NCBI RefSeq assembly: GCF_963506605.1
Contig: NC_083288.1
Location: 28,458,001-28,522,000, forward strand
Direction of reading: 5' to 3'
Source: Zootoca vivipara
Lineage: Eukaryota
DNA length: 64,000 bases
Below, one piece after another: positions 16,339-55,599 of the stretch; the first letter of the stretch is position 1, and each line of letters starts with the position of its first letter. The position numbers and the translations under genes are program-made. Below the pieces are notes generated by a model. It did not search any database. It saw only the letters and a program-made list of their open reading frames with translations, and was not told the origin of the DNA.

Positions 16339-17281
16339 TCATTTCCATTCAGTGAAAAGTGAAAATCTTCCCAGAATCTTTAGCAAGGCAGCTTTGACTT
16401 CCTGGTTCCTCAAAGTATAAATAAGTGGGTTCAAAACTGGTGTGACTGCACTGTATATAAGGGTCACCGTCATGTCCCTTTGAGACGCATTACCCACAGA
16501 GGGGAGCATGTAGTTAAACAAAACAGGCACATAGAGCAAACCAACCACCATCAGATGGGATCCACAGGTGGAGAAGGCTTTCTGTTGACTACTTCGGGAT
16601 TTCACTTTGAAGAGAAGGAAAGTGATAAAAGTAGGAGAGGAGTGTTGCTATAAAAGGACCGATTGCAATGCAGCTGGTTACAGTATTGAGGAGCATGAGG
16701 TTGAGGTGGGTGCTGCCACATGCCAGTTTCAGCAAAGGCTTGATGTCACACACAAAAATGCTCAATGTGATTTGGCCCACAGAAGGGCAGACGGGCAGTT
16801 GCCACTGCATGCATCAGGGCATGAAAAAAGCCAGTGGACCATGTGGCTGCTGCCAAGAGTTGGCAGACCTGCTTGCACATGATGATGGAGTAACGCAAAG
16901 GATTGCATATTGCAACATATCAGTCAAATGCCATTATTCCCAGAAGAATGACTTCGCTGCTGCCCAAGAAATGGAAAAAGTGGAGCTGAGTCATGCATCC
17001 AGCAAAGGAAATGGTTTGTAGCTGTGACAGAAATCCAGCTAGCATCTTTGGAACAGTGACTGTGGAATAAAAGATATCAAGGCAGGAAAGGTGGCAAAGA
17101 AAAAAGTACATGGGAGTGTGAAGTTTTGGCTCAGCTATTGTGACAACCACAATAGCTGCATTCCCCACAATGCTGGCTAGATACATCAAGAAGAAGATAG
17201 CAAATAGTGTGTGCTGAAGGTCCCAAAGATTGGTCAGTCCCATCAAGATGAATTCTCTCACATCTGTTTGGTTCTCCGTTG
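16339..17281 (-). pseudogene. OR12D-like pseudogene A, main exon
   Basis: QLHFFHFLGSSE and CDIKPLLKLACG signatures; TGA replaces the R of DRY (16920-16922); +1 frameshift near 16750 and -4 frameshift near 16625. Confidence 0.92.
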
Positions 17282-19620
17282 CTAAAAGACAACAGGGAAT
17301 AATAAGAGGAGGGGAGGGCATTACAGAATGCTAGTAAAATCATTTACCCGCATCAGAAAATTATACAGTCAGTAGGCTCTGAACCTGCAGTGGAAATAGA
17401 AGCTGGACGAAACAGGCTAATGACATGCACACAAATGATGGAAAGTGACTTAGAACTTCCCAGTCTAATTGTAAATGCACCTCTCATTTGGTTTAGAGAC
17501 ATCAGCTAATAATATGAGCTTCATCTTCATCTTATCTCTTATCTCATGGGGGGAAATGACTTACTAGAGGTATTGACCTTGTAATAATGTAGAGAACAAT
17601 ACACTGCAGTCCTCCTGAGTCTTTAATCATAAGAATATTCAATCCAACATTCTGTCCTGATACATGGACAGATTACAAGGAGAATATGAGGGCAACAGCA
17701 CTATCTCACCCTTTGATTCCTAGAAAATGGTACTGCATTATGCCTCCAACCATGGAAGTAGAACATAGGCATCATGGCTAGTTTCCATTGTTAATGTACC
17801 TTTGTAATTTTAAAAACAACCGTTCATCTCAGCAATAAGGCAATATTGTCAGACATATGATTTTTTTTCCCTACGAGTCTTTTAAAAAATAGTACTCCTG
17901 TATCTCAGGGCAAAACATCTTTTGGGTCCATTTTGTCTTCTATTCCTCAGAAGCGAATTTTTCATATATTAGCAGGTGGCAAAGGGGTACAACTGTCGCC
18001 AGCTCTCATGACGTTTGTGAATGCACACACAACACAATTAATGATGTCTCAGTTGATTATTTGAAGCTGCAATGTAGCATCAGAGTCCATCATGACCAAT
18101 AAAATCCATACTTTCAGTCAACAAACTCAAAAACGTTCATCCTCCAACATTCATACTTCTTTGTATTTTGCTATGCAGTCTTCCAACTAAGTAATGTGTA
18201 CAGAAAAATCACATGCTGAAATGAGGAGTGAATGAATATGCATTTGTTAGTGAGGCAGACATACACCAATGAATTATATTACATAAAATTTGTTTTGAAA
18301 AGATGAGTATATTTAGAGAAATTCATGCAAACAGGGTGCTGGATCTTCATGCAGATAGATAGCGAGATGTAAAGAATCAAATTTAAGTTTGAAAAAATGA
18401 GATGCTGAGGAAAACCAAACAGAGATATTTGGCCATCCCTACCACAGGTACATATACTAGGTGAATTTTGTAGCTGGTACACAGTCTTACAATCTAGCTA
18501 GAATCTGGATTTCCTGCATCAAAATACAAATGGGGGAAAGAACCAAAACAATGGCAGTTATATTTGGAAGCATACAAGTCATGAACTTAGGTTACAGTAG
18601 TTTGCCTTTTGAAAAAAAAAGTGTGCCTATTTGTGTGGCAGAGATAGGAAGGAGGCCTAATTTCGGTCAGTGTTTGGCCTCTTGGGAATAGATGAACACC
18701 AGTGTTTGGGATCTGGATGAAAATTCAGAATGAAGTGGCTTATGGAATCTGCTGTAAGCTTTTGAAGGGAAAATGGGTTATAAATATGCAAATACCCTTT
18801 CTTCACCACATTTTACAGTTGGTGAAAATAGCATTCAGAATTTCAAAATTATAATGAATGCAAAATGTTCATAAAGAGTTCTAATGAGACTATGAAACTT
18901 TGTCCCTTCTGCAGTTCAGGTAAGATGCTACTTGCATGTTAAAGGTGGTAGACTTTGCTGAAATATTTTCACCTTGCTTAGAAGCGCTTCTGAAGCACAG
19001 CAAAGGGTATCCTGCCTCAAACCACAATAATGCAAGGGGCATTGCCGCCAAACATTGATGATAACTCAGTTTTAAAATTAAACACTTGATGCAACATAGT
19101 GTTGTGTCTATGCCCGTGTTACCCATGGAAACATACGCAAACACAAAGGAACAGGCACTCATATTTTAATATTGAATTCCATAAATAACGAATGCAATAT
19201 TGTTAGTGCTTTCTCTTTCCAGTATGCCTCTTTGGGGATCTTCTGACATGCTGTATAGGATCAAAGAATGGAAACAGATAGCATTGTTTAGGATCAATGT
19301 GTGCTAAACAATTATTTGAGTTGTAGACCACCAATTCTATTCAGTTTAGACCCACTGAAAATAAAAACCTAACTATGTAATTTTCAATAATTTCAGAGGA
19401 TGCTATCTGTGTAGGACACAATATTTGTATTTTATCATGAGCCTTTTCATTTTCTATTGTGTTCTTTACCAAGGTTTATCAGCTGTTGCTTTCTGCAAAA
19501 CAGACTGTAACCTCGAACATGTACACTGCAACTTTCGTTAGAAAGAATGGGACAAACATAAAGGGCTTCATTAACTTCCTGTTACATATTGTGTTCTGTA
19601 AAGCTACAGACAGCTCCTAC

Positions 19621-19642
19621 CTTGATCAATCCACTTGTCCAT
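19621..19642 (-). pseudogene. Upstream coding mini-exon of OR12D-like A (MDKWIDQ+G)
   Basis: ATG GAC AAG TGG ATT GAT CAA G|gtagga; phase-1 join to ag|CA ACG GAG AAC at 17281. Confidence 0.7.
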
Positions 19643-19809
19643 AACATAAAACGAGAAGTTAATTGAAGCTGAGAATACTATATGAGGTAGGAAGCCATAT
19701 GACTTTTAATAGATAAAAAGAGTGTCACTGATTGCTGAACCACACATAAATTTATTTGCCTAAATCCTGGTATGTAACATGTGACAAATTGGGGGGAAAG
19801 AACTACCAA

Positions 19810-19925
19810 CCAGCATTAAGCTAGAGACTCTTGATTGCTCATTTGGGAATTGAATCTAGAAGCCTATCTATTTTGAGAAAATTAACCAGTTGCACTTTTG
19901 AGATTACAGATCGTGCCTTTGAGAA
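19810..19925 (-). promoter_or_regulatory. Candidate OR promoter of copy A (homeodomain TAATG plus O/E-like sites)
   Basis: cattaa at 19814, tttgggaa at about 19842, repeated (c/t)tttgaga (reverse complement YYYCARRRR-like); block conserved upstream of copies B, C and E. Confidence 0.5.
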
Positions 19926-19965
19926 AATAAACATTTTGTGCAACCAATGCATGCTGGCAAGTTGC

Positions 19966-20104
19966 NNNNNNNNNNNNNNNNNNNNNNNNNNNNNNNNNNN
20001 NNNNNNNNNNNNNNNNNNNNNNNNNNNNNNNNNNNNNNNNNNNNNNNNNNNNNNNNNNNNNNNNNNNNNNNNNNNNNNNNNNNNNNNNNNNNNNNNNNNN
20101 NNNN
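19966..20104. other. Assembly gap
   Basis: Run of N. Confidence 1.
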
Positions 20105-20216
20105 GTCCAGTCATGTCTGACTCTGGGGTTGTGGCGCTCATCTCACCAGGGACCCAGGTGGCGCTGTGGATTAGATCACAGAGTCTAGGGCTTGCTGATC
20201 AGAAGGTCGGCGGTTC

Positions 20217-20258
<42 letters not shown>
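20105..20258. mobile_element. Rearranged Sauria SINE fragments followed by (GT)n
   Basis: Minus-strand SINE 3' piece joined to a plus-strand head (gggacccaggtggcgctgtgg...gatcagaaggtcggcggttcga); homologous to the 24397 copy. Confidence 0.7.
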
Positions 20259-20260
<2 letters not shown>

Positions 20261-20681
20261 GATTATGAATTTTGTGTCGTCCCCCCCCCCAGTAATATCT
20301 AAAAGGACTAGATTTCAGACTAGCAAGACCCACATAGGAAATTGTTATGTGTGGCAAAGGGGGAAAAGAAAGGTCAATGAAGGGTTTGACATTTTAGTCT
20401 CAAAGCCAGATAGAGAGAACTGGATGGTAGTGCTGAGGTTCCCCACCCATAACTTACTGTTACACCGAAACCTGGGGTGGTCATTCCCCCCCCTCCAAAC
20501 AAACCACAGTGTCATGGACAAGCTGGATTCAGAAGAGTGGTGGGAGGTACAAGCTGAGGAAGCCTTTAGGGAAGACCCAGAGGGAGAAGGCTCAGAACCA
20601 AGTAATTTGTGGTAAGATGACAATGAGTGGTCAGAGGGAGAAGGAGCAGACTGAGAGGAGGAGGCATCAGAAGCAGAAGAG

Positions 20682-21030
20682 CCGACCCTCCGAGTGTCCC
20701 TATTTTCCAGGGAGGTCCCTGATTTAGAGAAGCCATCCCGGTTTCTGATTTGATCCCAAAGTGTCCCACTTTTCGTTTGGACGTGCCTATTTTCATTGGA
20801 GAAATGTTGGCGGGTTTGGAGTTATCTGACCTCCGAGCCATCTGAAGGCAATCCTGTATAGGGAAGTTTTTTTTAAAAAAATGTTTAATGTTTTATTATG
20901 CTTTTATATATGTTGGAAGCTGCCCTGAGTGGCTGGGGCAAACCAGTAAGATGTGTGGGGTATAAATAGTCAAGTTATCATTATGGAATGGTATGTCCCT
21001 ATTTTCATTGGAGAAATGTTGGAGGGTATG
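20682..21030 (+). mobile_element. About 350-bp non-autonomous DNA transposon, copy 1, inside an older LTR-like region (about 20275-21495)
   Basis: ccgaccctcc...ggagggtatg ends, internal tgtccctattttc repeats; second copy inverted at 36894-37225. Confidence 0.75.
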
Positions 21031-22515
21031 GAAGAGGTGACAGGGTTTAGGGAACAGGAAGAGGCCAAGGGAGAGCACAGTTCAAACTCTGAGGCAGAAG
21101 AGGGGGCTGTAGAGGGTTGGAACCAAGAGATAGAGAGGCAGGCTGCTGAAGAAGTCAGCTGGTCTACCCCCTCCTGCTGTGACCAGCTACCCCTTCCCCG
21201 GTCTCCTAGAACATGCTGAGAAATGAAAAGGGCAGAGCAGAGGGTGGTTGTGTGCAGACATTGCCTGAGACTGCAGGTGAAAGACCTGGAGAGGAGGAGT
21301 CCTAAGCAGCACCAGGAAGATGAGAATCTTCAGTCCTTGCAACGACTTCTTCGGGGAAATAACTCCTAGAACGAGTTGCTGAAACCACTGGGCCGGATCT
21401 GTTGTTTGTTTCCTAGAATATAGAGTTAACTTCACTGACCTTGGGTGATTTATTGTTTCATTGCTGACCTACTACTGACTCCAGTCCTGACTCACAAGTT
21501 GTAATTAATGTTTGTCATTAGTTTACTGGTTTGGGTTTATCGAGACCCAGGTTCATATGGAATTTGAAGCCAGGAAATGTATGTCCTCCTGGCAACAGCT
21601 CAAGCAGGAAGCATCCACAATAAAACAATAAAACAAAAACAAACCAATAACCCCCTCCCCGACCCACTCCCCCAGCACATTTTCACCTGATGCCAAAAGG
21701 TATGTAATGAAGGCACTAGCAAAACCTCCTTGACCAGAGCATTCCATAAATGGGGAGGCACTGTAGAAAAGACCCCTTCACATATTGCCACCCTCCAGAC
21801 CTCTCATGGAAGAGGCACATGAAGAAGGGTGGCAGATGATGATCTCAGTGTCCAGGTAGATTTAACTATGTTTCAAAGCAAGGAGGTTCCATTCTGGTCT
21901 GCAAGGCAATTTCCTGAAACTGCATCCACCTATCAATCAGCTGATGTTGCAAGTGATGTCAACTGATGGAAGGGAGGATAGAATTTAGTTTACTGGATGT
22001 GCATCTCTGTTCCCTGCTTGGAACAATCCTGTGCAAGGGATGTTTACCAGTGGACAGGACAACCCATTCATCTTTTATGTGATATTATAATGAAGTAATA
22101 TGATCAACAGGAGGATTTCACTCCCTTAAAATTGGCACATGTGCTCAAGGGGGGAAAAGGGGAGGGTTCATCCCTGAAATATGAATGAGGCCTCAGCAAT
22201 TTATTTTTCGGTCCTTTGATAAATAGAGCGCTCGTTGATTACATAAGATGTAGAATGTAAAGCATATTTGGAGATTTTACTGAGAAAACACATCAGAAGT
22301 CCTTTAGAAGTTAGCTGAAGAACCATGACACCCATAAAATTTCTCAGGAGTGGTGGCTTACAGATTTAAACAAAAAAATCATCCACTATCAGAGTCCTGT
22401 AAAAACAAAGTTGTCTTTCTCTCGCAGTACTGCTACAGTGTGAGTTCCTGTTCTGGTGGTTACATGCCTAAGAGTATTACCATTGGGGGGGGAACCCTCC
22501 TTTCATCATTTCCTT

Positions 22516-23456
22516 TCAGTGAAAAGTGAAATATTTTTTCCCCAGAATCTTTAGCAAGGCAGCTTTGACTTCCTGGTTCCTCAGAGTATAAATAAGTGGG
22601 TTTAAAAGTGGGGTGAGTGCACTGTATATGAGGGTCACCATCATGTCCCTTTGAGAAGCGTTACCCACAGAGGGGAGCATGTAGTTAAACAGAACAGGCA
22701 CGTAGAGCAAACTAACCACCATCAGATGGGATCCACAGGTGGAGAAGGCTTTCTGCCGACCACTTCGGGACTGCACTTTGAAGAGAAGAAAAGTGATAAT
22801 GTAGAAGTAAGAGAGGAGTATGGCAATAAAAGGACCCATAGCAACACAGCTGGTTACTGTGTTGAGGAGCATCAGGCTGAGGTAGGTGCTACCGCAGGCC
22901 AGTTTCAGCAAAGGTTTGATATCACATAAAAAGTGTTCAATGCGGTTTGGCCCACAGAAGGGGAGACGGGCAGTTGCCATTGTATGCATCAGGGCATGAA
23001 AAAAGCCAGCGGACCAAGTGCTTGCTGCCATGAGTTGGGAGACCTGCTTGCGCATTATGATGGTGTAACGCAAGGGGTTGCATATTGCAACATAGCGATC
23101 AAATGCCATTACGCCAAGAAGAATGCCTTCACTGCTTCCCAGGAAATAGAAGAAGTGGAGCTGAGCCATACAGCCACCAAAGGAAATTTTTTGCGTCTCT
23201 GATAGAAAACCAGCCAGCATCTTTGGAACCGTGGTGGTGGAATAGAAAATGTCAAGGCAGGAAAGGTTTCCAAGAAAAAAGTACATGGGGGTGTGAAGCT
23301 TTGGTTCAGCTATTGTGACGAGCAAGATTGCTGCATTCCCCACTAGGCTGGCCAAATAAATCATCAGGAAGATTGCAAAGAGTATACACTGAAGCTCCCA
23401 GAGATTGGTTAGGCCCATTAAGATGAATTCTGTCACCTCTGTTTGGTTCTCCGTCA
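22516..23456 (-). CDS. OR12D-like gene B, main exon (intact; 320 aa with mini-exon)
   Basis: Open frame with all OR motifs; begins ttttag|TG ACG GAG AAC CAA ACA with no in-frame ATG before NQT. The ORF-track start at 23508 is a TTG in the intron. Confidence 0.9.
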
Positions 23457-24396
23457 CTAAAAGACAGCAGAGGATAATAAGGTGAGAGGAGGTCACTGTA
23501 GAGTGCAAGTAATGTCCATTACCTACAATATGTAAGAAAATTGTTCAGAAAGAAGTGTATAAAATGGTTCAGTGAAATTGTAAGATGCGTGAAATACTGA
23601 TAACATGTATATAAATGATATAGGATGCTTTGTTTTCTATTCCTTAAAAGTATGAAGGTTTTCATAAGTGCATCAGGTAGCAACAGAGTACAACTCCCAG
23701 CAGCTGACATGGTGTGTGTGTGCCTAACAGATACCAGGAACCTGCCTTTTAGCATCAGAGTCTATTGACAGAATTCATACTTTCAAAAAACAGCCTGGGG
23801 AGCAAACACAGCCTTCTTCCAAAATTAACACTTATCTGAATGGTGCAACTACAGCCTTGTAGTTTGCACAAAGATTGATATACGGTACATGCAAGTGCAC
23901 ACATAGTGTGCATATAATTATTCCAGAAAATTTATTGTGATTTTGAGATTAGTGATCTGATATGGTCAACTCTTCCTGTCTCTGTTTATCCCTTCCTAGC
24001 TCTGGTTTTCTGTGTTTTATTGTTTTCTCTATCCTGGTCAGTAAAAGCCTTTGATGTATGGCCTCGTATTTGAGCCTGTATTAGCCCTAACAGGCCACAG
24101 GTCTATAAAATATCTAGTTTTGGGGCATAGAAGTCAGAAGTTCAGCACAGTCTATTGGCCGCAGAGCTGCACATCGAAGTTCTACCTGGGGGGACACTTC
24201 GCCACTTCTTCAGGGCTTCTCAGTGACAGATTGAAGTGTTTGCTTGGTAATGTATATTTTCCTTGCTGTTTGGAATAAAATTTGTAATCTTCTCACCCAC
24301 TTGCATTTGTATTGCTTCTGAATCTAATTTTAAAAGAATCATCTTGCATTTGGCAAGACACTGAGAGATACCAAAATTGAGATATTTGTTCATCCA

Positions 24397-24695
24397 CCAC
24401 AGAGCCTAGGGCTTGCCGATCAGAAGGTCGGTGATTTGAATCCCCATGACGGGGTGAGCTCCCGTTGTTCGGTCCCTGCTCCTGCCAACCTAGCAGTTCA
24501 AAAGCACATCAAAGTGCAAGTAGATAAATAGGTACCGCTCCAGCAGTAAGGTAAACGGCGTTTCCGTGTGCTGCTCTGGTTTGCCTGGAAGCTGTACGCC
24601 GGCTCCCTCGGCCAATAACGCAAGATGAGTGCCGCAACCCTAGAGTCGGTCACGACTAGACCTAATGGTCAGGGGTCCCTTTACCTTTACCTTTA
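24397..24695 (+). mobile_element. Sauria SINE (in the intron of OR B)
   Basis: cttgccgatcagaaggtcgg..., gacggggtgagctcccg..., gtagataaataggtacc, (ACCTTT)n tail. Confidence 0.9.
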
Positions 24696-24937
24696 ACACT
24701 GATACAGATACAAGGTGAATCTTGTGGCCTTTGTATGCTTCCCAGCATTAGATACAATGGATTATTGTAGCTAGTGTGCACCCATGAAATCCACGACAGA
24801 TTCTAGATAAGCCACCTTAAAGGGATTGGAGGGCCAAAACAATGACAAAACAATGACATTTGGAAAATGGGTAGCAAACTTGCTTGACGCACATCATGCT
24901 AAATATTCTGTTTGATCATGCTGCAGGCAGCTCCTAC

Positions 24938-24959
24938 CTTGATGATCCCACCTGTCCAT
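24938..24959 (-). CDS. Upstream coding mini-exon of OR12D-like B (MDRWDHQ+G)
   Basis: ATG GAC AGG TGG GAT CAT CAA G|gtagga; 22+941=963 nt in frame. Confidence 0.75.
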
Positions 24960-26274
24960 TAGATAAGTAAATTGAAGTTTTGAATCCTGTAAGAGGTATG
25001 AAGGAAGCCATATGGGTTTAAATGTGACTGGGGAAAAATCCACTCTGATGGCTGTTTGAACCCCACATGGCTTTATAAGCCTAAACCCTAATATGGAACA
25101 TGTTCCCAGCCAATTAAAGATTTTTGCTGTCATTGGGGAAAACAACTACAATCATCAAGTTAGGGACTCTTGATTGTTCAGATGGGAACTGAGCGCACAA
25201 GCATATTGGTTTTAAGAAAATAAACCATTGCTGCTTCTGATTGTGCAATTTATGCTTTTGAGAATAAAATAATTAGTGACATCGGTTAATTCTAACAAGT
25301 TTTATTTTATGGCAATTTTTTTTTACTGCTGTAGCATCATTATATCTGGCTGTTTCAATAATTTTTAAAAGGCTCACATTTCAGAGTAAAAGGTCTGTTA
25401 TAAAGCACCATTATATTCACTCCTTGAAGACTGATACACGGTACAGATTTTCTCATTCCCTCTCATTTCACTCACCCACAAATCTCTACCAACCTCTACT
25501 GTAATAACCTTGGGTTCAATGTATTGAGAAAATGGTTGACATGGTAGTATTAAGTAACACTTAGAACAAGCAATAATTTTCTACTAGAGCCCTTTCAGCC
25601 AACTAGGATCAGTTCATTTTTGTTCCATTTATTATATTTCTATGCTGCTTTTCACTCACATGAGTGGACACCAACAAATCACCAATTGATAGGTAGAGTT
25701 GTGTAAAGGTGAACTTGAAAGTCATTTTTAATGTTATCCAGAATATTGTTGGAAATTGATTTCATTAAACCATACGATCATTCTATTATGCTGTTTAAAC
25801 TGAGGTAAGGTTAGGTCAAGGATGCTTGGATGAGAAATCATCGACTCTAACATGGATTTTATTATCAAGAACCAAACTGGAACCAAACTCAGTTATCAGT
25901 TTTGGACATCTGGTGGCATTGGGCCCAGGTTCAGATGAAAGATGAAAGCAGGAAATGGCTTAGCTCTTAGCAACAACACAAACAGGAAGGTGTGAAGTAT
26001 CCACAATTTCAGCTACGTCGTAACGCAAGAGTAGGGAACCTCCACCCCACAGGCCAATTGTAGTCCACTAGGGGTTCAAATTTGTTCCGTATGCCATTTC
26101 TGCAAATCATGCTCAACTATCAATCAACTGATGTCGCAAGTGATGTCAGCTTGTGGGTTGGAGCTCCTAGTAGAATACTAACTTGCATGCCTGTTTCCTA
26201 CTGGGAATAGCCAAGGAAAGCATCCCCAACATTTTGCAGCCAGTGGCTGTGGCAGGGATTCTCCTGCCTACAAC

Positions 26275-26461
26275 TAGGGTTGCCAGACTCAATAGAGGAC
26301 AGGACTTCTGTGCCTTTAATTGCCCTGCTCTCTTTTGAGCCTGGAAACCTTAAAGAGAAACCAGCAGACCCTTTGTTCCAATTTTGAGTTTCCAGACTCA
26401 AAAGAGAGCAGGGCATTTAAAGGCACAGAAGTCCTGTCCTCTATTGAGTCTGGCAACCCTA
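26275..26461. mobile_element. Palindromic hAT MITE (187 bp)
   Basis: Long TIRs tagggttgccagactcaatagaggacagg...; 8-bp TSD cctacaac. Confidence 0.9.
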
Positions 26462-27448
26462 CCTACAACCTTTTTTGGGGGGGGGGAATACTGGTTTTTT
26501 TCTCCACTCTCAATCACTTGATTGGTGATAGGTAATGGAAGTGTATAAACTATGCCTTAAAGCAAGGGGTCAATCTAAGCCCACCAGGATGTCCAATTTG
26601 GTGGATGATGTGATTTCCCCAAACCACATCCACATATCAATCAGATGATGTCACAAGTGAGATCAGCTGGTGAGTAGGAGGGTAGAGATCAATTCTGGCT
26701 TAGCTGTGGATGCAAGTGTCCCCCTTTTATGCAGGCATCAACTGTGAGAGGGACTTACCTTGCATGCAAACAATCCTTCAAAGTACAGACTTAGTTCTCC
26801 TCTCTCCATCACCTGATGGAGAGGGGATAATCGAGGCTTGACAAGTTAGATACATACTTAGAACTCCCAAAAGAACCAAGGAAAGGGCAGAAAACACCTC
26901 TCACACTGTGATTCCCAAGTGAGTGAAATCCAGGTGATTTTGGCTGTTTGGGAACCCTGCAGAAGGGATTTTTAGTGGTGGGAAGAGTAAAGCACCCATC
27001 AATCATATGATTGATGAGTGGATTTCCCACCCATCTGTCAACCTTGGGTTTCAGAACCCAATAGGTTCTCCACCCAGGTTTAAATTGACATGAATGAGAA
27101 ACACAGCATCTGATTTTTTAGTGCTTTGATAAGTAAAGGGTCCATTGCATTTCACAACAAGTGATAAAGTACATTTGGAGATTTCACTTAGGAAACACAT
27201 CAACAGAACTCTCAAAGAAAGCTAAGAGACCATGATATACATTTGGTTTCTTAGGAGTGGTGGCTTATATTATACTATGTTTAAACAAAAGATTTTAGCT
27301 GATATCAGAGACCCGCAATGATGTCCCACACTGTAAAAACCCATCTATTTCTTGTTATTCTTCTCGTATTACTGTTGTAGTTGTAGTTTCCCTTTTGGAG
27401 TACACTTGTCTTAGTGTAGTGTTAGTCACAAAGTCTTCTTTGATTTTT

Positions 27449-28392
27449 TCATTTCAGTGGAAACTGAAATGTTCTGCTGAAAATCTTTAACACAGCAGTT
27501 TTGACTTCCTGGTTCCTCAGTGTATAAATAAGTGGATTCAAAACAGGGGTAACTGCACTGTATATGAGGGTCACCATCATTTCTCTTTGATAAGCATTCT
27601 CCACAGAGGGCAGCATGTAGTTAAACAACACTGGAATGTACATCAAACCAACCACCATCAGATGGGATCCACAGGTAGAGAAGGCTTTCTGCCAACCACT
27701 TCGGGATTGTACTTTGAAGAGAAGAAAAATGATAATATAGAAGTAGGAGAGCAGCGTGACAATGAAAGGTCCCATGGCTACGGAGCTAGCTACAGTATTG
27801 AGGAGCATGAGGTTGAGGTAGGTGCTGCCACAGGCCAGTTTCAGCAAAGGTTTGATGTCACATAAAAAGTGTTCAATGTGGTTTGGCCCACAGAAGGGCA
27901 GACGGGCAGTTGCCACTGCATGCATCAGGGCATGAAAAAAGCCAGCGGACCAAGTGGCTGCTGCCAAGATTTGGCAAACCTGCCTGCGCATGATGATGGT
28001 GTAACGCAAGGGGTTGCATATTGCTACATAGCGGTCAAATGCCATTACTCCAAGAAGAATGGCTTCGCTGCTGCCCAAGAAATGGAAAAAGTGGAGCTGG
28101 GCCATGCAGCCACCGAAGGTAATGGTTTGGACTGGCAACAGAAATCCGGCTAGCATCTTTGGAACAGTGACTGTGGAAAAGAAGATGTCAAGGCAGGAAA
28201 GGTTTCCAAGAAAAAAGTACATGGGAGTGTGCAGTTTTGGTTCAACTATTGCAACAAGCACAATAGCTGCATTCCCCAGCAGGCTGGCTAAATACATCAT
28301 CAGGAAGATGGCAAAGAGTGTACACTGAAGCTGCCAGAGATTAGTCAGGCCCATCAAGATGAATTCTCTCACCTCTGTTTGGTTCTTTGTCA
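27449..28392 (-). CDS. OR12D-like gene C, main exon (intact; 321 aa with mini-exon)
   Basis: Open frame with OR12D signatures; begins ttttag|TG ACA AAG AAC CAA. Confidence 0.9.
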
Positions 28393-28681
28393 CTAAAAGA
28401 CAGCAGGGAGGAAGAAAGATAGGTGAGGTCACTGTAGAGTATTATTCAAATCCATCACCTATATCAGAAATCTGTACAGACATAATCAGATACATTCTAA
28501 AACCCCTTCCATTCTATATAGATAAGTGACTCTCTTTTCCTTTAATCATATTCATTACTTGTGAGATTCCTAGTCATATCATACAGATGAATGAGTTGTA
28601 AAATATACAGACTTTTTAAACATGCAGAGAAGCTCATGGGACACTCCTTGTGAGAACATTTATCCCAGGATCCTGTTCTCA

Positions 28682-28901
28682 TACTGTGCTGTGCATTTAC
28701 AATTTTATTTGGTAGAAGCTGAATTATGGTTTGGATGATTTGGATTTTATTGAATTTGGTTGTTTTAATCGTATTAATTTTAATCTCAGTTTTAATTAAT
28801 TTGTTTGCTGCTTTAAATTTATCAAATTGTTTTGTTAGTTGTATGATGAATGCTGTATTGTTACGTAGATATGGGCCTATGGCTGTAATAAACTTGAACT
28901 T
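28682..28901 (+). mobile_element. Short LINE 3'-end insertion in the intron of OR C
   Basis: 13-bp TSD gatcctgttctca (28669-28681, 28902-28914); ends aataaa(cttgaa)n. Confidence 0.65.
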
Positions 28902-29554: not shown

Positions 29555-29597
<43 letters not shown>

Positions 29598-30889: not shown

Positions 30890-30911
30890 TTTGATAAGTC
30901 CGCTTGTCCAT
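30890..30911 (-). CDS. Upstream coding mini-exon of OR12D-like C (MDKRTYQ+A)
   Basis: ATG GAC AAG CGG ACT TAT CAA A|gtaggt; 22+944=966 nt in frame. Confidence 0.75.
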
Positions 30912-31324
30912 TGAACTTGAGACTGCTTTAAGTGGTATGGAGGAAGTATTTAAAGGAGACAAAGCAACAACAACAACACTCTGATTGCTGTGTGAGCCCA
31001 CGCGATTTTTCGTATGCAACATGTGCCCAGCTTGTTAAAGATTGTTGGCCACCGTTGGGCAAATAAGCTACATTCATTAATTTACTGCCTCTTGATTGCT
31101 CATCTGGGAATTGAGTCCACAATGCTCTTTATTTTGAGGAAAATAAACAATTTGTGCTTTTGAGAATACAAAGTGTGCTTTTGAGAATACAAAAATTATG
31201 CAATCCATAAATTCTGCTACATTGTTTTTATTAACCAAGATTATTGTTAACATCACCAATGTTTGCTCTTTCAATAATTTTTAAAAAAGGCTCACATTTT
31301 TAGTAGATTGTCCATCTTAACACC

Positions 31325-31535: not shown

Positions 31536-31567
31536 CATCTTAACACCATTCTCTTCTCTCTTTAGAA

Positions 31568-32110: not shown

Positions 32111-32274
32111 AAACCTGGTTGTTGACACCACACCATTGCCTCCTTTCTAACAGTTCAGACCCATTTGTGGGTAAGTTACATGGTATGACTCAAATTTCGA
32201 AAGTATGGCCCAGGCTACCTGCTTTGATTTATTCCTCAGCATCTCCAAGTAGGACTAGGAGAGGACCCTGTCTT

Positions 32275-32649
32275 CAGTGGCATCGCAACGTGGGGGCGGT
32301 GGGGGCAGTGCGTTCCTGGTGCCATGTCTCTGAGGGTGACAAGGCGGCACTCCACTGTGGCAGCGCGAGCAGCAGTTTGGCGCCGGCGCCACTCCAGCGC
32401 CGTACAGACGATGCCAGGATCCTCTGCTCACAGCTGCAGCCATGACCAGAGGATCCTGGCACCGTCCGTACGGCACTGGAGTGCCACCTCCGCCAAGCCG
32501 CTACGTAGCACGCATGTGCGGCATCACTATGTATGACGCATGCATCACACGTAGCAACCCCGCACATGTGCGCTACGTAGCGATGCCCCACCCCCGGGTG
32601 CATGTCATGTTTGCCGATCCGGGTGCCCAAGCGGCTCCCTCCGCCACTG
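32275..32649. mobile_element. CpG-rich hAT MITE with two internal palindromes
   Basis: cagtggc...gccactg TIRs; 8-bp TSD cctgtctt. Confidence 0.88.
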
Positions 32650-32725
32650 CCTGTCTTATACCCTGGAGAGCCATCATGAGTTAGTCAAATAGATCAATGA
32701 TCCAATTCTGGTATAGCCCAGCTTC

Positions 32726-33664
32726 CTAGGTTTGAAATATAATTTTTCTGCATAATATTTTCCTCAGAGCAGATTTTACTTCTTGATTCCTCAAAGTGTA
32801 GATCAAGGGGTTTAAAACAGGTGTGACGACACTGTATAGCAGAGTGATGCTCATTTCTCTTTCAGAAGGTTCACCAGTAGAGGCAAGCATGTAGTTGAAA
32901 ATAACTGGAACATACAAAAGTGCTACCACTGTTAGGTGAGAAGCACAGGTTGAGAAGGCCTTCCAACGGCTCTGCCATGACTGGACTTTGAAGAAGAGGA
33001 AGGAGATGATATAGAGATAAGAAAGGAGAGTGAGGAAGAAGGAACCTAGAGCAATGCAGCTTGTGACAACATTGAGGAGGGTCATGTTGAGGGCAGTGCT
33101 ACTGCAAGCCAATTCTAGCAGGGGCTTGATGTCACAGAAAAAGTGCTGGATAATATTGGGGCCGCAGAACCACAGCCGGGAAGTGACTACTGTGTGCATT
33201 AGGGCATGAAAGAAGCCCGCGGCCCAGGTAGCCACAGCTAGTGCAATACAAGCCCATTTATTCATGATGATGGTGTAACGCAGAGGGTTGCATATGGCCA
33301 CATAGCGGTCATATGCCATGACTCCCAGAAGCATGCCTTCACTGCTGCCCAGGAAGTGGAAGAAGTGCAGTTGAGTCAGGCAACCAATAAAGGAGATAGT
33401 GTTGTGCCTCTTTAGGAAGCCATTCAGCATTTTGGGTACAGTAACTGTGGAGCAACATATATCCAGGCAAGAGAGGTTTCCAAGGAAAAAATACATGGGG
33501 GTGTGAAGGCGTTGCTCAACCAGGACTACTGCCAAAATGGCCCCATTTCCTAGCAAGCAGGCCACATAGAGCAGCAGGAAGACTGTGAAAAGCATGTGTT
33601 GCTGTCTGTGGTCATTTGCTATACCCAAGAGAACGAACTCATGGACCTCTGTCTGGTTCCCCAT
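32726..33664 (-). CDS. OR12D-like gene D (intact, 312 aa)
   Basis: ATG retained 2 nt after the acceptor (cag|AG ATG GGG AAC CAG); QLHFFHFLGSSE, MAYDRY, CDIKPLL, NPLIYTLRN. Confidence 0.94.
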   Translation of the reverse strand: MGNQTEVHEFVLLGIANDHRQQHMLFTVFLLLYVACLLGNGAILAVVLVEQRLHTPMYFFLGNLSCLDICCSTVTVPKMLNGFLKRHNTISFIGCLTQLHFFHFLGSSEGMLLGVMAYDRYVAICNPLRYTIIMNKWACIALAVATWAAGFFHALMHTVVTSRLWFCGPNIIQHFFCDIKPLLELACSSTALNMTLLNVVTSCIALGSFFLTLLSYLYIISFLFFKVQSWQSRWKAFSTCASHLTVVALLYVPVIFNYMLASTGEPSEREMSITLLYSVVTPVLNPLIYTLRNQEVKSALRKILCRKIIFQT

Positions 33665-34253
33665 CTCTGTTCAAATAAAAAAAAATGGGGGGAAATAGGC
33701 CAGTGGTTCTAGAATAGAACTAGAAGAGAATGTACTGCAGTGATGAATGAATTGAAAGACAATGGATTGTGGTGTTGGGAATGAAGCCATGAAGGCAATT
33801 TGACAAGGCTTCTTTCCCCTGGTGAGTTTTTAAATTAATTTTAAGGAAAGCAATATGAGAAAGAAAGGCATGAAGATTATTTTCAAAGTATGTAGTATTT
33901 AAGCAGAAGTCCAGAGTTTTGGATTACCATCATTTCTTCCATCTTCGTGATTCTAAGTAGAATGCTGAATGCAGGATGGAAGACATCTGATGTGGCATTT
34001 ATCTCACTCTGTCATTCCCCAAAGAGTGATGAATTTGCATTAGAGCAGGGGTAGTCAAAGTTGTGCCCTCAAGATGTTGTTGGACTCCAACTGCCACTAG
34101 CTCTAGCCAGTTTGTTCAAGAATGGAGTGAGTAATAGCATCTTCTGGTGCATACTGCATTGGCCGCCCCTGAATTAGAGAAACACAGTTAGTGACATATT
34201 GAATGATCAGATCACGTTTTGTATAAATTGAGTTTGTTTCAGTCTCCTCTATC

Positions 34254-34255
<2 letters not shown>

Positions 34256-34312
<57 letters not shown>

Positions 34313-34357
34313 TCCCAAGGAGAACACCATTCCCCCTGTGGGAGAAGTGCAAAGCAA

Positions 34358-34390
<33 letters not shown>
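34256..34390. repeat. (CA)n and (TAG)n microsatellites
   Basis: Direct inspection. Confidence 0.95.
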
Positions 34391-34391
<1 letters not shown>

Positions 34392-35644
34392 TGCACCTTC
34401 TCTCCATCACCTGTTAACACTTCACTGTCTGTGTCTTGTACAAGCAATGAATGTGCCCCTCACTTCTTCTTCTTGCTCTGAACCACTTTGCATTGCTTTG
34501 TCATTGTTTTAGCAACCTTTGTAAACCTGCCTTACATCACCCTTACATGCTTGGGCTATCTATTGCATTGGTCTGTGGTTTTATGCCCCCCTTTCATTTC
34601 ATATACATATCCTAAAAGACTCACCTCACCAGAGTGCTGACTGAACAACCAAACTGGCTTCTTCAGATGTGTCCCATGTTTCTTTTTGTTCCCCCTTCCT
34701 TTTATTTGTTAAATGTGTAACAATATAACAAAATAACAAAAACAACAAATGTTGCATAAACTAGAAAAGGTTTATTCTTGTTGATTCAGATGAGCCACTT
34801 TAACTGGCCCCTGTAGCTGTGTCATTATGGGAAGTTTGATGTCACTCCCCCCCCCCCAAGAGAAACTTAAAAAGACATTGAATTAAACATTATTACCTGC
34901 GAAGTTGCTCAACATCAAACTGTACTTAAAGTTACAGTACAATGGGGCAGCTGCAAACATGGGAAATTCATTGCCTCAGTTGCATGCAAAGGAAGCATTT
35001 TAAGACATAAAAAATGAAAGATAGTGAAATTTATGGAAAATCCATGTTGTACACCTAAAGCATGTTCAGCCCACATTTGAAACACATTCTTCACCCCAAA
35101 AATTGTAGGAACTATAGCCCCCCCCCATCTCAGAGCTACCATTTCTAGCACTCCTAATAACTTATACTTCCCAGGGTTCTTTGAGAGAAGTCATGTGCTT
35201 TAAATGTGCAGTGCATGTGCTTTAGATGTATAGTGCGGATTTGACCATAGCTATGTATTTTGGGTAGCTCCATCAAGTTGCATCTCCACAGATTCCCCAC
35301 TAGTTATTAGGCAACATTTAATCAGATAAAGATTTTTACTTGGCATGGAGACAAGTGTTTAAAACTGTTAATTGCTGAAGATCAATTCTTAATTGCTGAA
35401 GTAATTATTAATATTGAGGACTAGCACAACAGTATTACTATGAGACAGAAAATGAGACGTTTTACATGCGCAGACCGTAAAAATCATGCTTTGTATCATT
35501 TCCCACATCTATTCCACTTTTTCCACTGTGGGAACTGTACTCCTAAGTTTTAACTCATTTATTTCTTTAATTCTGTGATGCAACCAATAGAGGAGAATAG
35601 AGGTAGGAAGGTATCTGAAATCTGCTAAGCAGATGGCAGTTAAT

Positions 35645-35872
35645 TAGGGCTGCCATATGTCTGGATTTTCCCAGGATTTCATTACTGGGATTTCAAAGGT
35701 GAAATTGACGTCCCGGGGTCATTTCCTAGAGATGCTTTGTACTGGATCTTAGATTAGTTGACCAAAAATTATGAGATTTTTGTGTTTTTGTAAAAGAAAA
35801 AGAAAGAAAAAAGCTCAATGATCTTGGAGTTTGTTTAAAAACAGCTCAACTTTGTGAAATATGGCAACCCTA
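35645..35872. mobile_element. hAT MITE with TAGGG(C/T)TGCCA ends
   Basis: tagggctgccatat...atatggcaacccta; TSD cagttaat/tagttaat. Confidence 0.75.
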
Positions 35873-36893
35873 TAGTTAATGGATCCACATACTGAATGCA
35901 TTTTTAAAATCTTTTTAAATACTGTAAGTTGCTTGCTGCTGCAGCTCTTACCTTAGCAAACTATATACTTCGTTCAGTCTAGATATTCAACTTGTAAATA
36001 GATTAAAATCCACAGAACCAGAGTGAGATGTTATCATCAGTTTGCCTGCACTCATATTAAAGCAGAGGAGAGATATAGCTTTTTTGTATACTTTTGAGTG
36101 TGCTAATTTTATCACATCTACTCTCCCTTGGAAAAGAAAAACCTTTAGGAGAAAAAACCAAAACCTTTGGAGATTTTTCATGTCATATGAGAATTCCTTT
36201 GTTTTTGAAAACAGAAATGATTAATATGGTCTTTCGGGATGGTATGTTAATTGTTTGTTTTATATGATATTGTCTAGAGTGGGAGAGAAAATATTGAGCT
36301 TGTTTAAGCAAACTTGCTGATGAATTCCAGCTATGAAATTTCATGTTGGAGTCCATCTTTGAAATTCTTTTGTTTTTCTTTTCTTTTCAGGCCACTAACA
36401 GTGAATCCTTCTTCTTTTTTACCCATTGGTTTCTTCACTTTGCCTTTTTTATATATCAGATCTGTATCCATTTATTAGTTTCAAAAAAGGTGCATCAGTT
36501 TGTTCTTTGTAGGCAGCAAATGGGTATTGTTGACAACTAAAGGAATATATCATATTGGTTGATTTCATCATGTCTCATAATACCATTGCAAATATGGAGA
36601 TTTCACCTCAACTTTCATTTCCTATATGCCTTCCCATCCAAATAATTTTGGTGAGCTCAGTATAAAACTTCAATACTTGATTGAAAACCACCAAGTAAGT
36701 TGTGGTAGAGTTATTAAGTTATAATGGACTTGTGTTAAGTTAAACTGGAAAAGTGTTCATAATGTTTTCCGGAATATTTTTGGGAAAACACTTGTTAAAT
36801 ACTATGATTGTTCTGTTAGGCTGTTAAAAGTGATGCAAGGTTCAGACAAAGATCCTCAATTTGTTTATTTGTATTTATTTATTAAATTTTATA

Positions 36894-37225
36894 CCACCCT
36901 CCAACATTTCTCCAATGAAAATAGGGACATCCCATTCCATAATGATAATTTTACTATTTATACCCCACACATCTTACTGGGTTGCCCCAGCCACTCTGGG
37001 AAGCTCCAAACATACATAAATCATAATAAAACGTTAAACATTAAAATAACTTTCCTATACAGATTGCCGTCAGATGGCTCAGGGGTCGGATACCCTCCAA
37101 TATTTCTCCAATGAAAACAGGGACGTCTTAAGGAGAAGTGGGAGATTCTGGGATCATATCAAAAACCAGGATGACTTCTCTAAATCAGGGATGTCCCTGG
37201 AAAATAGGGACACTTGGAGAGTCTG
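36894..37225 (-). mobile_element. About 330-bp DNA transposon, copy 2, adjoining an L2-like remnant (to about 37660)
   Basis: Reverse complement of 20682-21030. Confidence 0.75.
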
Positions 37226-37794
37226 CATTTGCAGATCTCAGGGAGATTATCAACATAATAATACACCAAAAACCACAAAAATATAACAATAACAATAACA
37301 ACAAAACAAAACCAATAATCCCCCTCTCTTGCCCACCCAATCCTTCAACACATTTAAAAGGATTTCTGGTGTCAATCAGTCAAAATCATGGTTGGAGAGG
37401 TGTATAATGAAGGCACTAGACAAACCTCATTGAGCAGAGCATTCCACAAATGAGAAGCCACTGGATAACAGTATCCTTCAGACCTCTCATGGGGAAGGCC
37501 CATAAAGAAAGGTCTCATGGAGGAGTCACGTGAAGAAGGGCTTCAGATGAAGATTGCCTGGTTTGGGTCAGTTCATATGGGAAGAGGCAGTTCTCAAGAT
37601 ATTTCAGTTCTAATCTGTTTAAGGCTGTATAGATCAAAACCTTGAATTGGACTTATGAATTGAAACAAAATATTATGTCTGATATCAGAGACCTGCAGTG
37701 ATGTCCCACAAAGTAAAAAAGCCAATTTTCTTTCTCTTGCAATACTGCAGCAGTTTGAGTTATTCCTCTGGTGGTCACATTTCATAGAGTACGA

Positions 37795-38748
37795 TCAATG
37801 AAGAAGTCTCTTCTTATCATTACCTTTCAGTGAAATGTAAAAAAACTTTCTTCCCATAATCTTCAACAAGGCGGTTTTGACTTCCTGGTTTCTCAGTGTA
37901 TAGATAAGTGGGTTCAAAACTGGTGTAACAGCACTGTATATGAGGGTCACTATCATATCCCTTTGAGAAGCATTACCCACAGAAGGAAGCATGTAGTTAA
38001 ACAACACTGGCACGTACATCAATCCAACCACCATCAGATGGGATCCACAGGTGGAGAAGGCTTTCTGCCGACCAGTTTGGGATTGTACTTTGAAGAGAAG
38101 AAAAATGATAATGTAGAAGTATGAGAGGAGTGTGGCAATGAAAGGTCCCATGACAATGCAACTGGTTACAATATTAAGAAGCAAGAGGTTCAGGTGGGTA
38201 CTACCACAGGCCAGTTTCAGCAAAGGCTTGATTTCACAAAAAAAGTGTTCAATGTGATTGGGCCCACAGAAGGGCAAACGGGCAGTTGCCATCGCATGCA
38301 TCAGGGCATGAAAAAAGGCAGTGGAGTTGGCAGACCTGCTTGCGCATGATGATGGTGTAACGCAAAGGATTGCATATTGCTACATAGCGATCAAATGCCA
38401 TTACTCCAAGAAGAATGGCTTCGCTGCTGCCCAAGAAATGGAAAAAGTGGAGCTGGGCCATGCAGCTAGCAAAGGAAATGGTTTGGACTGGCAACAGAAA
38501 TCCAGCTAGCATCTTTGGAACTGTAGTTGTGGTAAAGAAGATGTCAAGGCAGGAAAGGTTTCCAAGAAAAAAGTACATGGGGGTATGCAGCTTTGGTTCA
38601 ACTATTGCAACAAGCACAATAGCTGCATTCCCCAGCAGGCTGGCTAAATACATCATCAGGAAGATGGCAAAGAATGTACACTGAAGAGCCCAGAGATTAG
38701 TCAGGCCCATCAAGATGAATTCTCTCACCTCTGTTTGGTTCTTTGTCA
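37795..38748 (-). pseudogene. OR12D-like pseudogene E, main exon
   Basis: 20-nt deletion near 38325 (TM4) relative to paralogues splits it into ORFs 38249-38749 and 37795-38301; an extra T near 37840 shifts the C-terminus. Confidence 0.88.
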
Positions 38749-39508
38749 CTAAAAGACAGCAGGGAGAAAGAAAGGTAGGTGAGTACCATTCAAGTCACTT
38801 ACCTATATCAGAAATCTCTACAGACATAAGCAGATAAAACCCAGTCTAATTCTAAACCCACTTACATTCTTTATAGGGAAATTACTTTATATTTCCTACA
38901 ACCATAATCATTACTTGGGTGCCCAGGTGTCACACAACCCTCAAACCTGTCTGATGAATAACAGTCAAGAAACAGTATTTTGAGTCAAATCAGGGACAAC
39001 TTTATTGCCATCCCCTCCCAGCCCCAGAAATAGACACTCACATTATAGCATATCATTACATAAATAACTACAGCAAAGTTGTCCCTCTATTCTCCTTTCA
39101 GTATGACTCTTTCAGAATCATCTGAAATCCACATTTTGACAAAGAATAGTTACAAATAGCATTGATCAAGATTAATGTTTGCCAATTCAATTATTTGAGT
39201 TGCAGCAAACACCCATTTAAATGATTGAATCCAAGTTATGTTCATTAACTTCAAATGGTCTTTTCTTACTAGCAGTAGCACTGGTTTCAACCCTTTGCTT
39301 TACTTTATCATCATGAGCATTTCATTTTTCTATTGTGTTCTTTACTCAGGTTTATCAGCTGCAGTTTTCACAAAAGCAGACTGTAAGCACAAACATGTAT
39401 AATTTCACCCTGGGAGTAAAGAATCGGATGAACATAAATTGCTTGATTAACATCCAGCTATATACAGTATACAGTAATGTGTTCTTTCAAGCTGCAGATG
39501 GTGCCTAC

Positions 39509-39530
39509 CTTGATGAATTCGCTTTTCCAT
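39509..39530 (-). pseudogene. Upstream coding mini-exon of OR12D-like E (MEKRIHQ+G)
   Basis: ATG GAA AAG CGA ATT CAT CAA G|gtaggc; phase-1 join to ag|TG ACA at 38748. Confidence 0.7.
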
Positions 39531-55571: not shown

Positions 55572-55599
55572 GTGAGACATAGCTCTGCGGCAATTGATG

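What the first reader, a model, noticed from the sequence alone, without database searches (positions are those of the whole stretch)
16339..39530. Four OR12D-like paralogues take their start codon from a conserved 22-nt upstream coding exon
Seen: all six OR12D-like genes have a splice acceptor exactly 2 nt before the ancestral start position. D and F keep ATG there; A and B have ACG, C and E have ACA, yet all keep the NQT glycosylation site and have no unspliced in-frame ATG before it. Each of A, B, C and E has a homologous ATG+6 codons+1 nt followed by GTAGG at 19621-19642, 24938-24959, 30890-30911 and 39509-39530 (introns 2339, 1481, 2497 and 760 nt). Splicing gives MDKWIDQATENQT, MDRWDHQVTENQT, MDKRTYQMTKNQT and MEKRIHQVTKNQT. 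Length, phase, ATG(G) and donor are invariant while codons 2-6 vary and flanking DNA has indels. Established: vertebrate OR coding regions are mostly single-exon, with a minority of split mammalian cases. Inference: an upstream exon became coding in this clade and the old ATG then decayed, so ORF scans would mis-start these genes or call them pseudogenes.
Basis: partly seen in the sequence, partly recalled or inferred. Interest (0 to 1): 0.9.

Follow-up and report, generated by a model that had tools for sequence, protein, structure and literature searches.

The report
Lizard smell-receptor genes with upstream start
In a lacertid lizard, two intact olfactory receptor genes (and two dead copies) have lost their usual start codon and most likely start from a tiny upstream exon, an arrangement already known in mouse and human and already annotated in a sister lizard.

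Summary
The sequence facts hold. Four OR12D-like genes on the minus strand (A, B, C, E) have ACG or ACA where relatives have ATG. Each has a homologous upstream ATG + 6 codons + 1 nt + GTAGG block that would splice in frame to a strong acceptor.

Three corrections:
- A and E are pseudogenes (a stop and frameshifts), so only B and C are candidates.
- A does have an unspliced in-frame ATG.
- The assembly gap lies 323 nt upstream of A's mini-exon, outside every model.

The genome is Zootoca vivipara or a very close relative.

Outside support: the RefSeq protein XP_077774393.1 of Podarcis muralis, the orthologue of C, begins MDKRTYQMTKNQT, exactly the predicted spliced N-terminus. It also lacks the fallback internal Met. 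C-type genes lack the old ATG in five lacertids yet stay intact and evolve about as slowly as their neighbours. B lost its ATG only in the Zootoca lineage.

No RNA evidence was obtained: three runs gave zero reads on these genes.

Split-start ORs are established in mammals (Barnes 2020). This is a new member of a known kind with modest interest.

The parts
22516..23456 (-). Gene B, exon 2: an intact OR12D-like reading frame of 312 codons + stop. The old start position 23452-23454 is ACG. The acceptor ttttag ends at 23457.
   Evidence: Pfam 7tm_4 matches full length. It is 98% identical to P. muralis P0001, which starts MENQT. DNA run X5 has a contig over 23412-23678 with no differences.
24938..24959 (-). 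Gene B mini-exon coding part: ATGGACAGGTGGGATCATCAAG (MDRWDHQ + 1 nt). The donor GTAGGA lies at 24932-24937.
   Evidence: An X5 contig covers 24674-25655 with no change here.
27449..28392 (-). Gene C, exon 2: an intact OR12D-like reading frame. The old start position 28388-28390 is ACA. The acceptor ttttag ends at 28393.
   Evidence: It is 95% identical to P. muralis P0126 over residues 8-330.
30890..30911 (-). Gene C mini-exon coding part: MDKRTYQ + 1 nt. The split codon A|TG reads Met. The donor is AAA|GTAGGT.
   Evidence: The peptide is identical to the first residues of RefSeq XP_077774393.1 (P0126: MDKRTYQMTKNQT).
16339..17281 (-). Gene A, exon 2: a pseudogene. It has TGA at 16920-16922, +1 nt near 16753 and -5 nt at 16628/16629. 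The old start 17277-17279 is ACG. An intronic in-frame ATG lies at 17319-17321.
   Evidence: Podarcis orthologues (P0004, P0131, P0132) are intact, 314 aa, and start MENQTD.
19621..19642 (-). Gene A mini-exon relic (MDKWIDQ + 1 nt), donor GTAGGA.
37795..38748 (-). Gene E, exon 2: a pseudogene with a 20-nt deletion at 38326/38327. The old start 38744-38746 is ACA. Its 5' half is unusually close to C.
   Evidence: Podarcis orthologues (P0006, P0008) start MKNQT.
39509..39530 (-). Gene E mini-exon relic (MEKRIHQ + 1 nt), donor GTAGGC. A further in-frame ATG lies 15 nt upstream, at 39543-39545.
32726..33664 (-). Gene D: an ordinary single-coding-exon OR12D-like gene. Its ATG is at 33662-33664 and an acceptor lies 2 nt upstream.
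   Evidence: No mini-exon homologue was found upstream.
41520..42452 (-). Gene F: an ordinary OR12D-like gene. Its ATG is at 42450-42452 and an acceptor lies 2 nt upstream.
   Evidence: No mini-exon homologue was found upstream.
25043..25103 (-). Conserved blocks upstream of the mini-exon: ACATGTTNCATA about 130 nt and CAGCNATCAGNG about 85 nt before the ATG. They are present in all four copies (also at 19726-19782, 30979-31024 and 39601-39660). They may be a promoter or 5'-UTR element.
   Evidence: ACATGTTNCATA gave 9 matches against 1.9 expected.
19966..20104 (.). Assembly gap (N). It lies 323 nt upstream of A's mini-exon and is not part of any model.
   Evidence: Not filled and not searched.

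Best explanation
Genes B and C are functional class II olfactory receptor genes of a lacertid-specific OR12D-like subclade. Their initiation codon sits at the 3' end of the first exon.

Proposed mechanism:
- A transcript starting a short distance upstream of the mini-exon is spliced from the GTAGG donor to the conserved acceptor, 2 nt before the old start position. The intron is phase 1 and 1.5-2.5 kb long.
- A scanning ribosome starts at the mini-exon AUG.
- The receptor therefore carries eight extra, poorly conserved N-terminal residues ahead of the NQT glycosylation site.

Proposed history:
- The upstream ATG arose in the common ancestor of A, B, C and E, while the old ATG was still present.
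- That made the old ATG redundant, and it was then lost.
- C lost it before the lacertid radiation. B lost it in the Zootoca lineage.
- A and E also lost it in the Zootoca lineage, where both are dead. E probably lost it through gene conversion from C.

Shown: the sequence anatomy, the orthology, the state of the old start codon across species, and intact, constrained C-type reading frames.
Inferred: that the block is really exon 1, that the splice is used, and that translation starts there.
For: 1. The anatomy is as described. All four copies have a strong acceptor tract and a donor matching 7 of 9 consensus positions.
2. This is the only ATG/donor candidate that is homologous in all four copies. 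It sits below conserved upstream blocks. Chance of retaining ATG, frame and no stop in all four is about 0.013.
3. RefSeq XP_077774393.1 (P0126, P. muralis), the orthologue of C, starts MDKRTYQMTKNQT, which equals the translation of the C mini-exon plus exon 2. In that species the fallback Met of FILMGLTN is Thr.
4. C-type proteins lack the old Met in the window, Zootoca, L. agilis, P. raffonei and P. muralis. All five have intact reading frames. They differ between species by 11-13 of 301 residues, against 9-14 for B, 6-11 for D and 8-10 for F.
5. Paralogue dN/dS is 0.15-0.22.
6. The 12 codons between the acceptor and the internal Met are almost invariant among copies. The intron next to them is only 56-84% identical.
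7. Mammalian precedent has the same geometry: 2-13 residues upstream and introns of 0.5-22 kb (PMC7055050).
Against: - There is no transcript evidence. Three RNA runs of this species, tissue unknown and about 6% of each read, gave zero reads on the B and C exons.
- The P. muralis model is a Gnomon prediction, and its RNA support could not be checked.
- The Kozak context is only moderate: G at +4 in all copies, but a pyrimidine at -3 in B, C and E.
- The mini-exon peptide itself is not conserved.
- The transcription start is unknown, so upstream ATGs may interfere.
- For B the ATG loss is recent (Zootoca only), so an intact frame says little. Two sister copies in the same array are already dead.
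- RefSeq models of the Podarcis B orthologue start at the old ATG without the extension.
Confidence: 0.7

Rival explanations
1. B and C are translated from the internal Met of FILMGLTN, as RefSeq annotates them. That gives 300-301 aa receptors lacking the first 12 residues and the N-terminal glycosylation site.
For: The RefSeq models P0123 and P0127 (this genome), P0124 and P0130 (Zootoca), P0010 (L. agilis) and P0128 (P. raffonei) all start there. The Met has G at +4.
Against: - The P. muralis C orthologue has Thr at that position and is still intact.
- The 12 codons upstream, including NQT, are nearly invariant among copies. The adjacent intron is not.
- From general knowledge of ORs, the N-terminal NxS/T site is near-universal and matters for surface delivery.
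- If the mini-exon is in the mRNA, its AUG would be met first.
Confidence: 0.08
2. B is a freshly dead gene that lost its start in the Zootoca lineage, and the array is decaying. The in-frame mini-exon ATG is an inherited leader feature with no present role in B.
For: - The loss of the ATG in B is confined to Zootoca and the window.
- A and E in the same array are pseudogenes that also lost the ATG.
- No RNA reads were found.
Against: - B's 312-codon frame is intact and has only 2 Zootoca-specific residue changes.
- The homologous architecture evidently sustains C across five species.
- If exon 1 is spliced as in C, loss of the old ATG has no effect on the protein beyond Met to Thr.
Confidence: 0.15
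3. A different, unrecognised upstream exon, or non-AUG initiation at ACG in B, supplies the start. The conserved block would then be a promoter or enhancer element rather than a coding exon.
For: - There are 3-7 alternative in-frame ATG/donor candidates per upstream region.
- The ACG of B sits in a good context (G at -3 and +4).
- Conserved non-coding blocks flank the mini-exon.
Against: - None of the alternative candidates is homologous between copies.
- ACA in C is not a near-cognate start.
- An independent gene model in P. muralis chose the same mini-exon.
Confidence: 0.07

Closest known systems
Mammalian 'split' olfactory receptor genes, class 1 of Barnes et al. 2020 (PMC7055050)
   Same: - The OR locus lacks the conserved initiator ATG in the main exon, and the ATG is recovered in the adjacent upstream exon.
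- The upstream part encodes only a few residues. Intron positions are at aa 2-13 in their supplement.
- Introns are about 0.5-22 kb.
- Such genes occur in small clusters of 2-4 related paralogues.
- They were formerly annotated as pseudogenes or truncated.
   Different: - This case is in a lizard and has an independent origin. It is specific to a lacertid subclade.
- OR12D genes do not appear in Barnes' list of split genes.
- There is no RNA-seq support here, whereas theirs rests on olfactory mucosa RNA-seq and single-neuron data.
RefSeq model XP_077774393.1, olfactory receptor 12D2-like, Podarcis muralis (P0126)
   Same: It is the orthologue of gene C (tree). Its first 13 residues, MDKRTYQMTKNQT, are identical to the spliced reading of the window's C.
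   Different: - It is from another species.
- It is 330 aa, because the reading frame runs 9 codons further at the 3' end.
- It has Thr instead of the internal Met.
- This genome's own RefSeq models (P0123, P0127) do not use the mini-exon.
Canonical vertebrate OR gene structure (non-coding 5' exon(s) plus one coding exon)
   Same: Genes D and F, and all six acceptors, fit it. The acceptor lies 2 nt before the ATG.
   Different: In A, B, C and E the leader exon carries an in-frame ATG and the main exon's ATG is gone.
Other squamate OR12D-like RefSeq proteins without the old start
   Same: P0012 (Rhineura) and P0023 (Hemicordylus) start at MGLT. P0035 (Candoia aspera) has 18 unrelated residues ahead of V-I-ENQT, which looks like another upstream-exon start.

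Membership tests
Olfactory receptor, class II, OR12D-like (Pfam 7tm_4) | Full-length match to PF13853, with the [13 protein letters not shown], KAFSTCxSH and NPxIY motifs and an N-terminal NxT site | tested here: met
   B, C, D and F match 7tm_4 at E 1e-53 to 1e-56 over profile positions 1-280 of 280. The motifs are visible in the translations. The best relatives are named OR 12D1/2/3-like.
Olfactory receptor, class II, OR12D-like (Pfam 7tm_4) | Uninterrupted reading frame | tested here: not met
   Met for B, C, D and F. Not met for A (a stop and two frameshifts) or E (a 20-nt deletion).
Split OR gene (criteria of Barnes et al. 2020) | Longest ORF spans two exons and exceeds 300 aa | tested here: met
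   For B, 7 codons + a split codon + 312 codons. For C, 7 + 1 + 313.
Split OR gene (criteria of Barnes et al. 2020) | [quoted passage not shown] | tested here: inconclusive
   The MGLTN Met gives 300 aa for B and 301 aa for C, which is borderline. That Met is Thr in the P. muralis C orthologue, so it is not conserved.
Split OR gene (criteria of Barnes et al. 2020) | Initiator Met and splice junction conserved in orthologues, or failing that in the closest paralogues | tested here: met
   Conserved in the four paralogues and in the P. muralis C orthologue at the protein level. Orthologue DNA for B was not obtainable.
Split OR gene (criteria of Barnes et al. 2020) | Transcript evidence for the upstream exon and the junction | tested here: inconclusive
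   Three RNA runs of the species gave zero depth on the B and C exons. The tissue is unknown and only about 6% of each run was read. No olfactory tissue run was offered.

The most novel reading that the evidence does not exclude
This locus may be a natural time series of start-codon relocation. The proposed sequence is:
- The upstream ATG arose once in the lacertid stem, before a four-way duplication.
- It left the old ATG redundant, so Podarcis A, B and E would today carry both ATGs.
- The old ATG has since been lost repeatedly: in the C stem, in B and A in Zootoca, and in E by conversion.

Intact OR12D-like genes without the old start in Rhineura, Hemicordylus and Candoia would then mean two things. 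Split starts would be recurrent across squamates, and squamate OR pseudogene or truncation counts would be systematically inflated.
Probability: 0.45. Interest if true: 0.45.

Novelty: new member of a known kind. Interest (0 to 1): 0.3.

Why it matters
- Annotation. RefSeq starts B and C, and their orthologues in three other lacertids, at an internal Met, cutting off the glycosylated N-terminus. ORF-based OR surveys would score them as truncated or as pseudogenes. The correct starts matter for repertoire counts and for any heterologous expression of these receptors.
- Evolution. Comparing the four orthogroups across species orders the events: the upstream ATG came first and the old ATG was lost later, more than once. 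That order is seldom visible in the mammalian cases.
- Limits. This does not change the understanding of OR genes. The principle was established in mouse and human in 2020, and one orthologue is already annotated this way.

Tried and rejected
The mini-exon could therefore not be examined in the genomes of Podarcis, Lacerta, Rhineura or Hemicordylus.
- RNA. No indexed RNA run holds the stretch. Three raw-read RNA runs laid on 22516-28515 gave reads only on two interspersed repeats (24316-24715 and 26116-26515) and none on B or C. This is uninformative, not negative.
- N-terminus search. A protein search with residues 1-40 of P0126 found only two cluster representatives, neither with the extension. 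Extended forms hidden inside clusters cannot be found that way.
- Cluster listings for ten further squamate proteins added nothing.
- A profile of the mini-exon region found no homologue upstream of D or F. The leader exon of those genes remains unknown.
- Homology with a mammalian OR12D split was rejected. OR12D is absent from Barnes' table of split genes.
- No paper on split ORs in squamates was found in the held library.
- 'Four functional split genes' was rejected. A and E are broken.
- Assembly error as the cause of B's ACG was rejected. An independent DNA run and the Zootoca RefSeq protein agree.
Exons were handled by reference only.


Full report
**What is there**

The window holds eight OR genes.
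- Six OR12D-like genes lie in tandem on the minus strand.
- Two other ORs lie on the plus strand.
- B, C, D and F give full-length matches to Pfam 7tm_4.

The best protein relatives are lacertid 'olfactory receptor 12D-like' RefSeq entries. The window's own proteins are in the collection on a 54.85-Mb chromosome. They differ from the Zootoca vivipara RefSeq proteins by only 1-4 residues. The genome is therefore Zootoca vivipara or a very close relative.

**Checking the observation**

Every coordinate and sequence statement about the mini-exons, donors, acceptors, intron lengths and spliced N-termini is correct.
- All six genes have an acceptor 2 nt before the old start position.
- D and F keep ATG there. 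A and B have ACG. C and E have ACA.
- The four mini-exons are homologous, gap-free and 73-82% identical.
- The flanking 150-nt stretches are on average 67% identical, with 1-7 gap events per pair.

Three points need correcting.
1. A is a pseudogene. It has TGA in the DRY arginine codon at 16920-16922, a 1-nt insertion near 16753 and a 5-nt deletion at 16628/16629.
2. E is a pseudogene, with a 20-nt deletion at 38326/38327. No Zootoca protein sits in the A-type or E-type clusters, which fits.
3. A has an unspliced in-frame ATG at 17319-17321.

The transcription start is also unknown. E has another in-frame ATG 15 nt upstream of its mini-exon ATG. In B and C the frame is open to more distant ATGs whose phase is not conserved between copies. 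'22 nt' is therefore the conserved coding end of a first exon of unknown length.

**The assembly gap**

The gap at 19966-20104 lies 323 nt upstream of A's mini-exon, beyond A's conserved upstream blocks (19726-19782), in intergenic DNA. No exon, intron or frame of any model crosses it. I did not try to fill it or look it up.

**Is it more than chance?**

A single in-frame 'ATG ... donor' upstream of an acceptor means nothing. Each upstream region holds 3-7 such candidates with a donor matching at least 7 of 9 consensus positions.

What matters is that only this block is homologous in all four copies. A rough simulation used the flanks' substitution and indel rates on a star tree. It gives about 0.013 for all four copies keeping ATG, frame and no stop, or 0.0025 if the GT is included. 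That is modest support. A star tree overstates the independence of the copies.

The peptide itself is not conserved. Only the ATG, the length, the final CAA and the donor are.

**Comparative evidence**

This is the strongest line.

*Orthology.* A maximum-likelihood tree places A, B, C and E in four separate lacertid orthogroups. Each also contains Podarcis sequences, and B and C contain Lacerta as well. The four groups together are sister to the amphisbaenian Rhineura. The duplications therefore predate the Lacerta/Podarcis/Zootoca split. Paralogue dS is 0.27-0.51 and dN/dS is 0.15-0.22.

*State of the old start.*
- C-type proteins lack it in the window, Zootoca, L. agilis, P. raffonei and P. 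muralis.
- B-type proteins keep MENQT in three Podarcis species and L. agilis. They lack it only in Zootoca and the window.
- A-type and E-type proteins keep it in Podarcis.

All four window copies carry the mini-exon ATG, with divergence typical of old paralogues. By parsimony the upstream ATG existed while the old ATG was still present, and the old ATG was lost later and repeatedly.

E's ACA probably arrived by gene conversion from C. The first 57 nt of their aligned coding sequence are identical. Their 5' 420 nt differ at about 5%, against about 12% further on. E shares C-type residues that the Podarcis E orthologue lacks.

*An independent model.* RefSeq XP_077774393.1 (P0126, P. muralis) is the orthologue of C. 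It begins MDKRTYQMTKNQTEVREFILTGLTN.

*Constraint.* The C-type frame is intact in five species. It differs between the window and Podarcis or Lacerta at 11-13 of 301 positions. The figures are 9-14 for B, 6-11 for D and 8-10 for F. A gene without a working start since before the lacertid radiation should not look like that.

*Mis-annotation.* The prediction that annotators mis-start these genes holds. Six RefSeq proteins in four species, including this genome's own B and C (P0123 of 300 aa, P0127 of 301 aa), start at MGLTN.

**Transcripts**

No indexed RNA run holds the stretch. Three raw-read RNA runs of the same species were laid on 22516-28515. Their tissue is not stated and about 6% of each was read. 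They gave zero depth on B and C and reads only on two interspersed repeats. This says nothing either way.

The DNA run X5 comes from a different study than the other holders listed. It has contigs over 23412-23678 and 24674-25655 with no difference at B's ACG, acceptor or mini-exon. The ACG is therefore not an assembly slip.

**Mechanism and odds**

The most likely reading is this. B and C are transcribed from a promoter just upstream of the mini-exon, where conserved blocks lie at about -130 and -85. The transcript is spliced GTAGG to ttttag. Translation starts at the mini-exon AUG, adding eight variable residues ahead of the NQT site.

My odds that this is the real start are about 0.8 for C and about 0.65 for B. 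A and E are relics.

The rivals are:
- initiation at the MGLTN Met (about 0.08);
- B being a newly dead gene (about 0.15);
- another exon or a non-AUG start (about 0.07).

**Comparison with what is known**

Barnes et al. 2020 (PMC7055050) described 41 mouse and 13 human OR loci with the coding region split across two exons. One class 'lacked a conserved iATG', which is 'found in the upstream exon'. They report 23 independent events in mouse, often in clusters of two to four paralogues. Their table gives intron positions at residues 2-13 and spans of roughly 0.5-22 kb.

The lizard case has the same geometry. OR12D is not in their split list, and no mini-exon homologue lies upstream of D or F. 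The origin is therefore independent and lacertid-specific. I found no paper on split ORs in squamates in the held library.

The first-stage reader also flagged similar split-start ORs just before this window and 11.9 Mb beyond it. I could not test those.

**Limits**

- The P. muralis model is a computational prediction whose RNA support I could not check.

**Verdict**

It is a new member of a known kind that is partly annotated already, and its interest is modest.

Noticed in passing
window 54167-60030 (+): Open frames typical of a vomeronasal type-2 receptor sit next to the OR cluster: a ligand-binding domain piece at 54167-55045 and a 7TM piece at 59455-60030. The identification is by eye only. 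A second assembly gap lies at 60839-60979.
   Followed up: no
window 24316-24715 and 26116-26515: Two interspersed repeats lie in B's intron and in the B-C spacer. They show enormous depth in a DNA run and reads on both strands in all three RNA runs. Many reads run on into unrelated sequence. These are probably SINE-like elements transcribed from other copies.
   Followed up: no
window 52011-53249 (-): A 412-aa open frame has reverse-transcriptase-like sequence, probably a LINE fragment. A smaller RT-like frame lies at 310-720.
   Followed up: no
window 19726-19782, 25043-25103, 30979-31024, 39601-39660 (-): Two short blocks, ACATGTTNCATA and CAGCNATCAGNG, are conserved about 130 and 85 nt upstream of all four mini-exon ATGs. 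They are candidate promoter elements of this OR subclade. Near-matches of the first block lie at 40053-40064 and 45919-45930.
   Followed up: partly
window 37795-38748 versus 27449-28392: The 5' 420 nt of E's coding sequence is about 95% identical to C, against about 88% for the rest. E also carries C-type residues absent from the Podarcis E orthologues. This suggests a gene conversion tract that also carried over the ACA.
   Followed up: partly
proteins P0012 (Rhineura), P0023 (Hemicordylus), P0035 (Candoia aspera): Other squamate OR12D-like RefSeq proteins lack the ancestral start. Two begin at MGLT. One has 18 unrelated residues before V-I-ENQT, which looks like a different upstream-exon start.
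   Followed up: partly
window 27425-27451 (-): The similarity of C to the P. muralis protein continues past the window's stop codon. P. muralis, P. raffonei and L. agilis read 9 codons further (…GKNKKRLCE). The Zootoca lineage therefore has an earlier stop.
   Followed up: no
window 20200-20260: A (GT)n microsatellite lies directly after the assembly gap.
   Followed up: no
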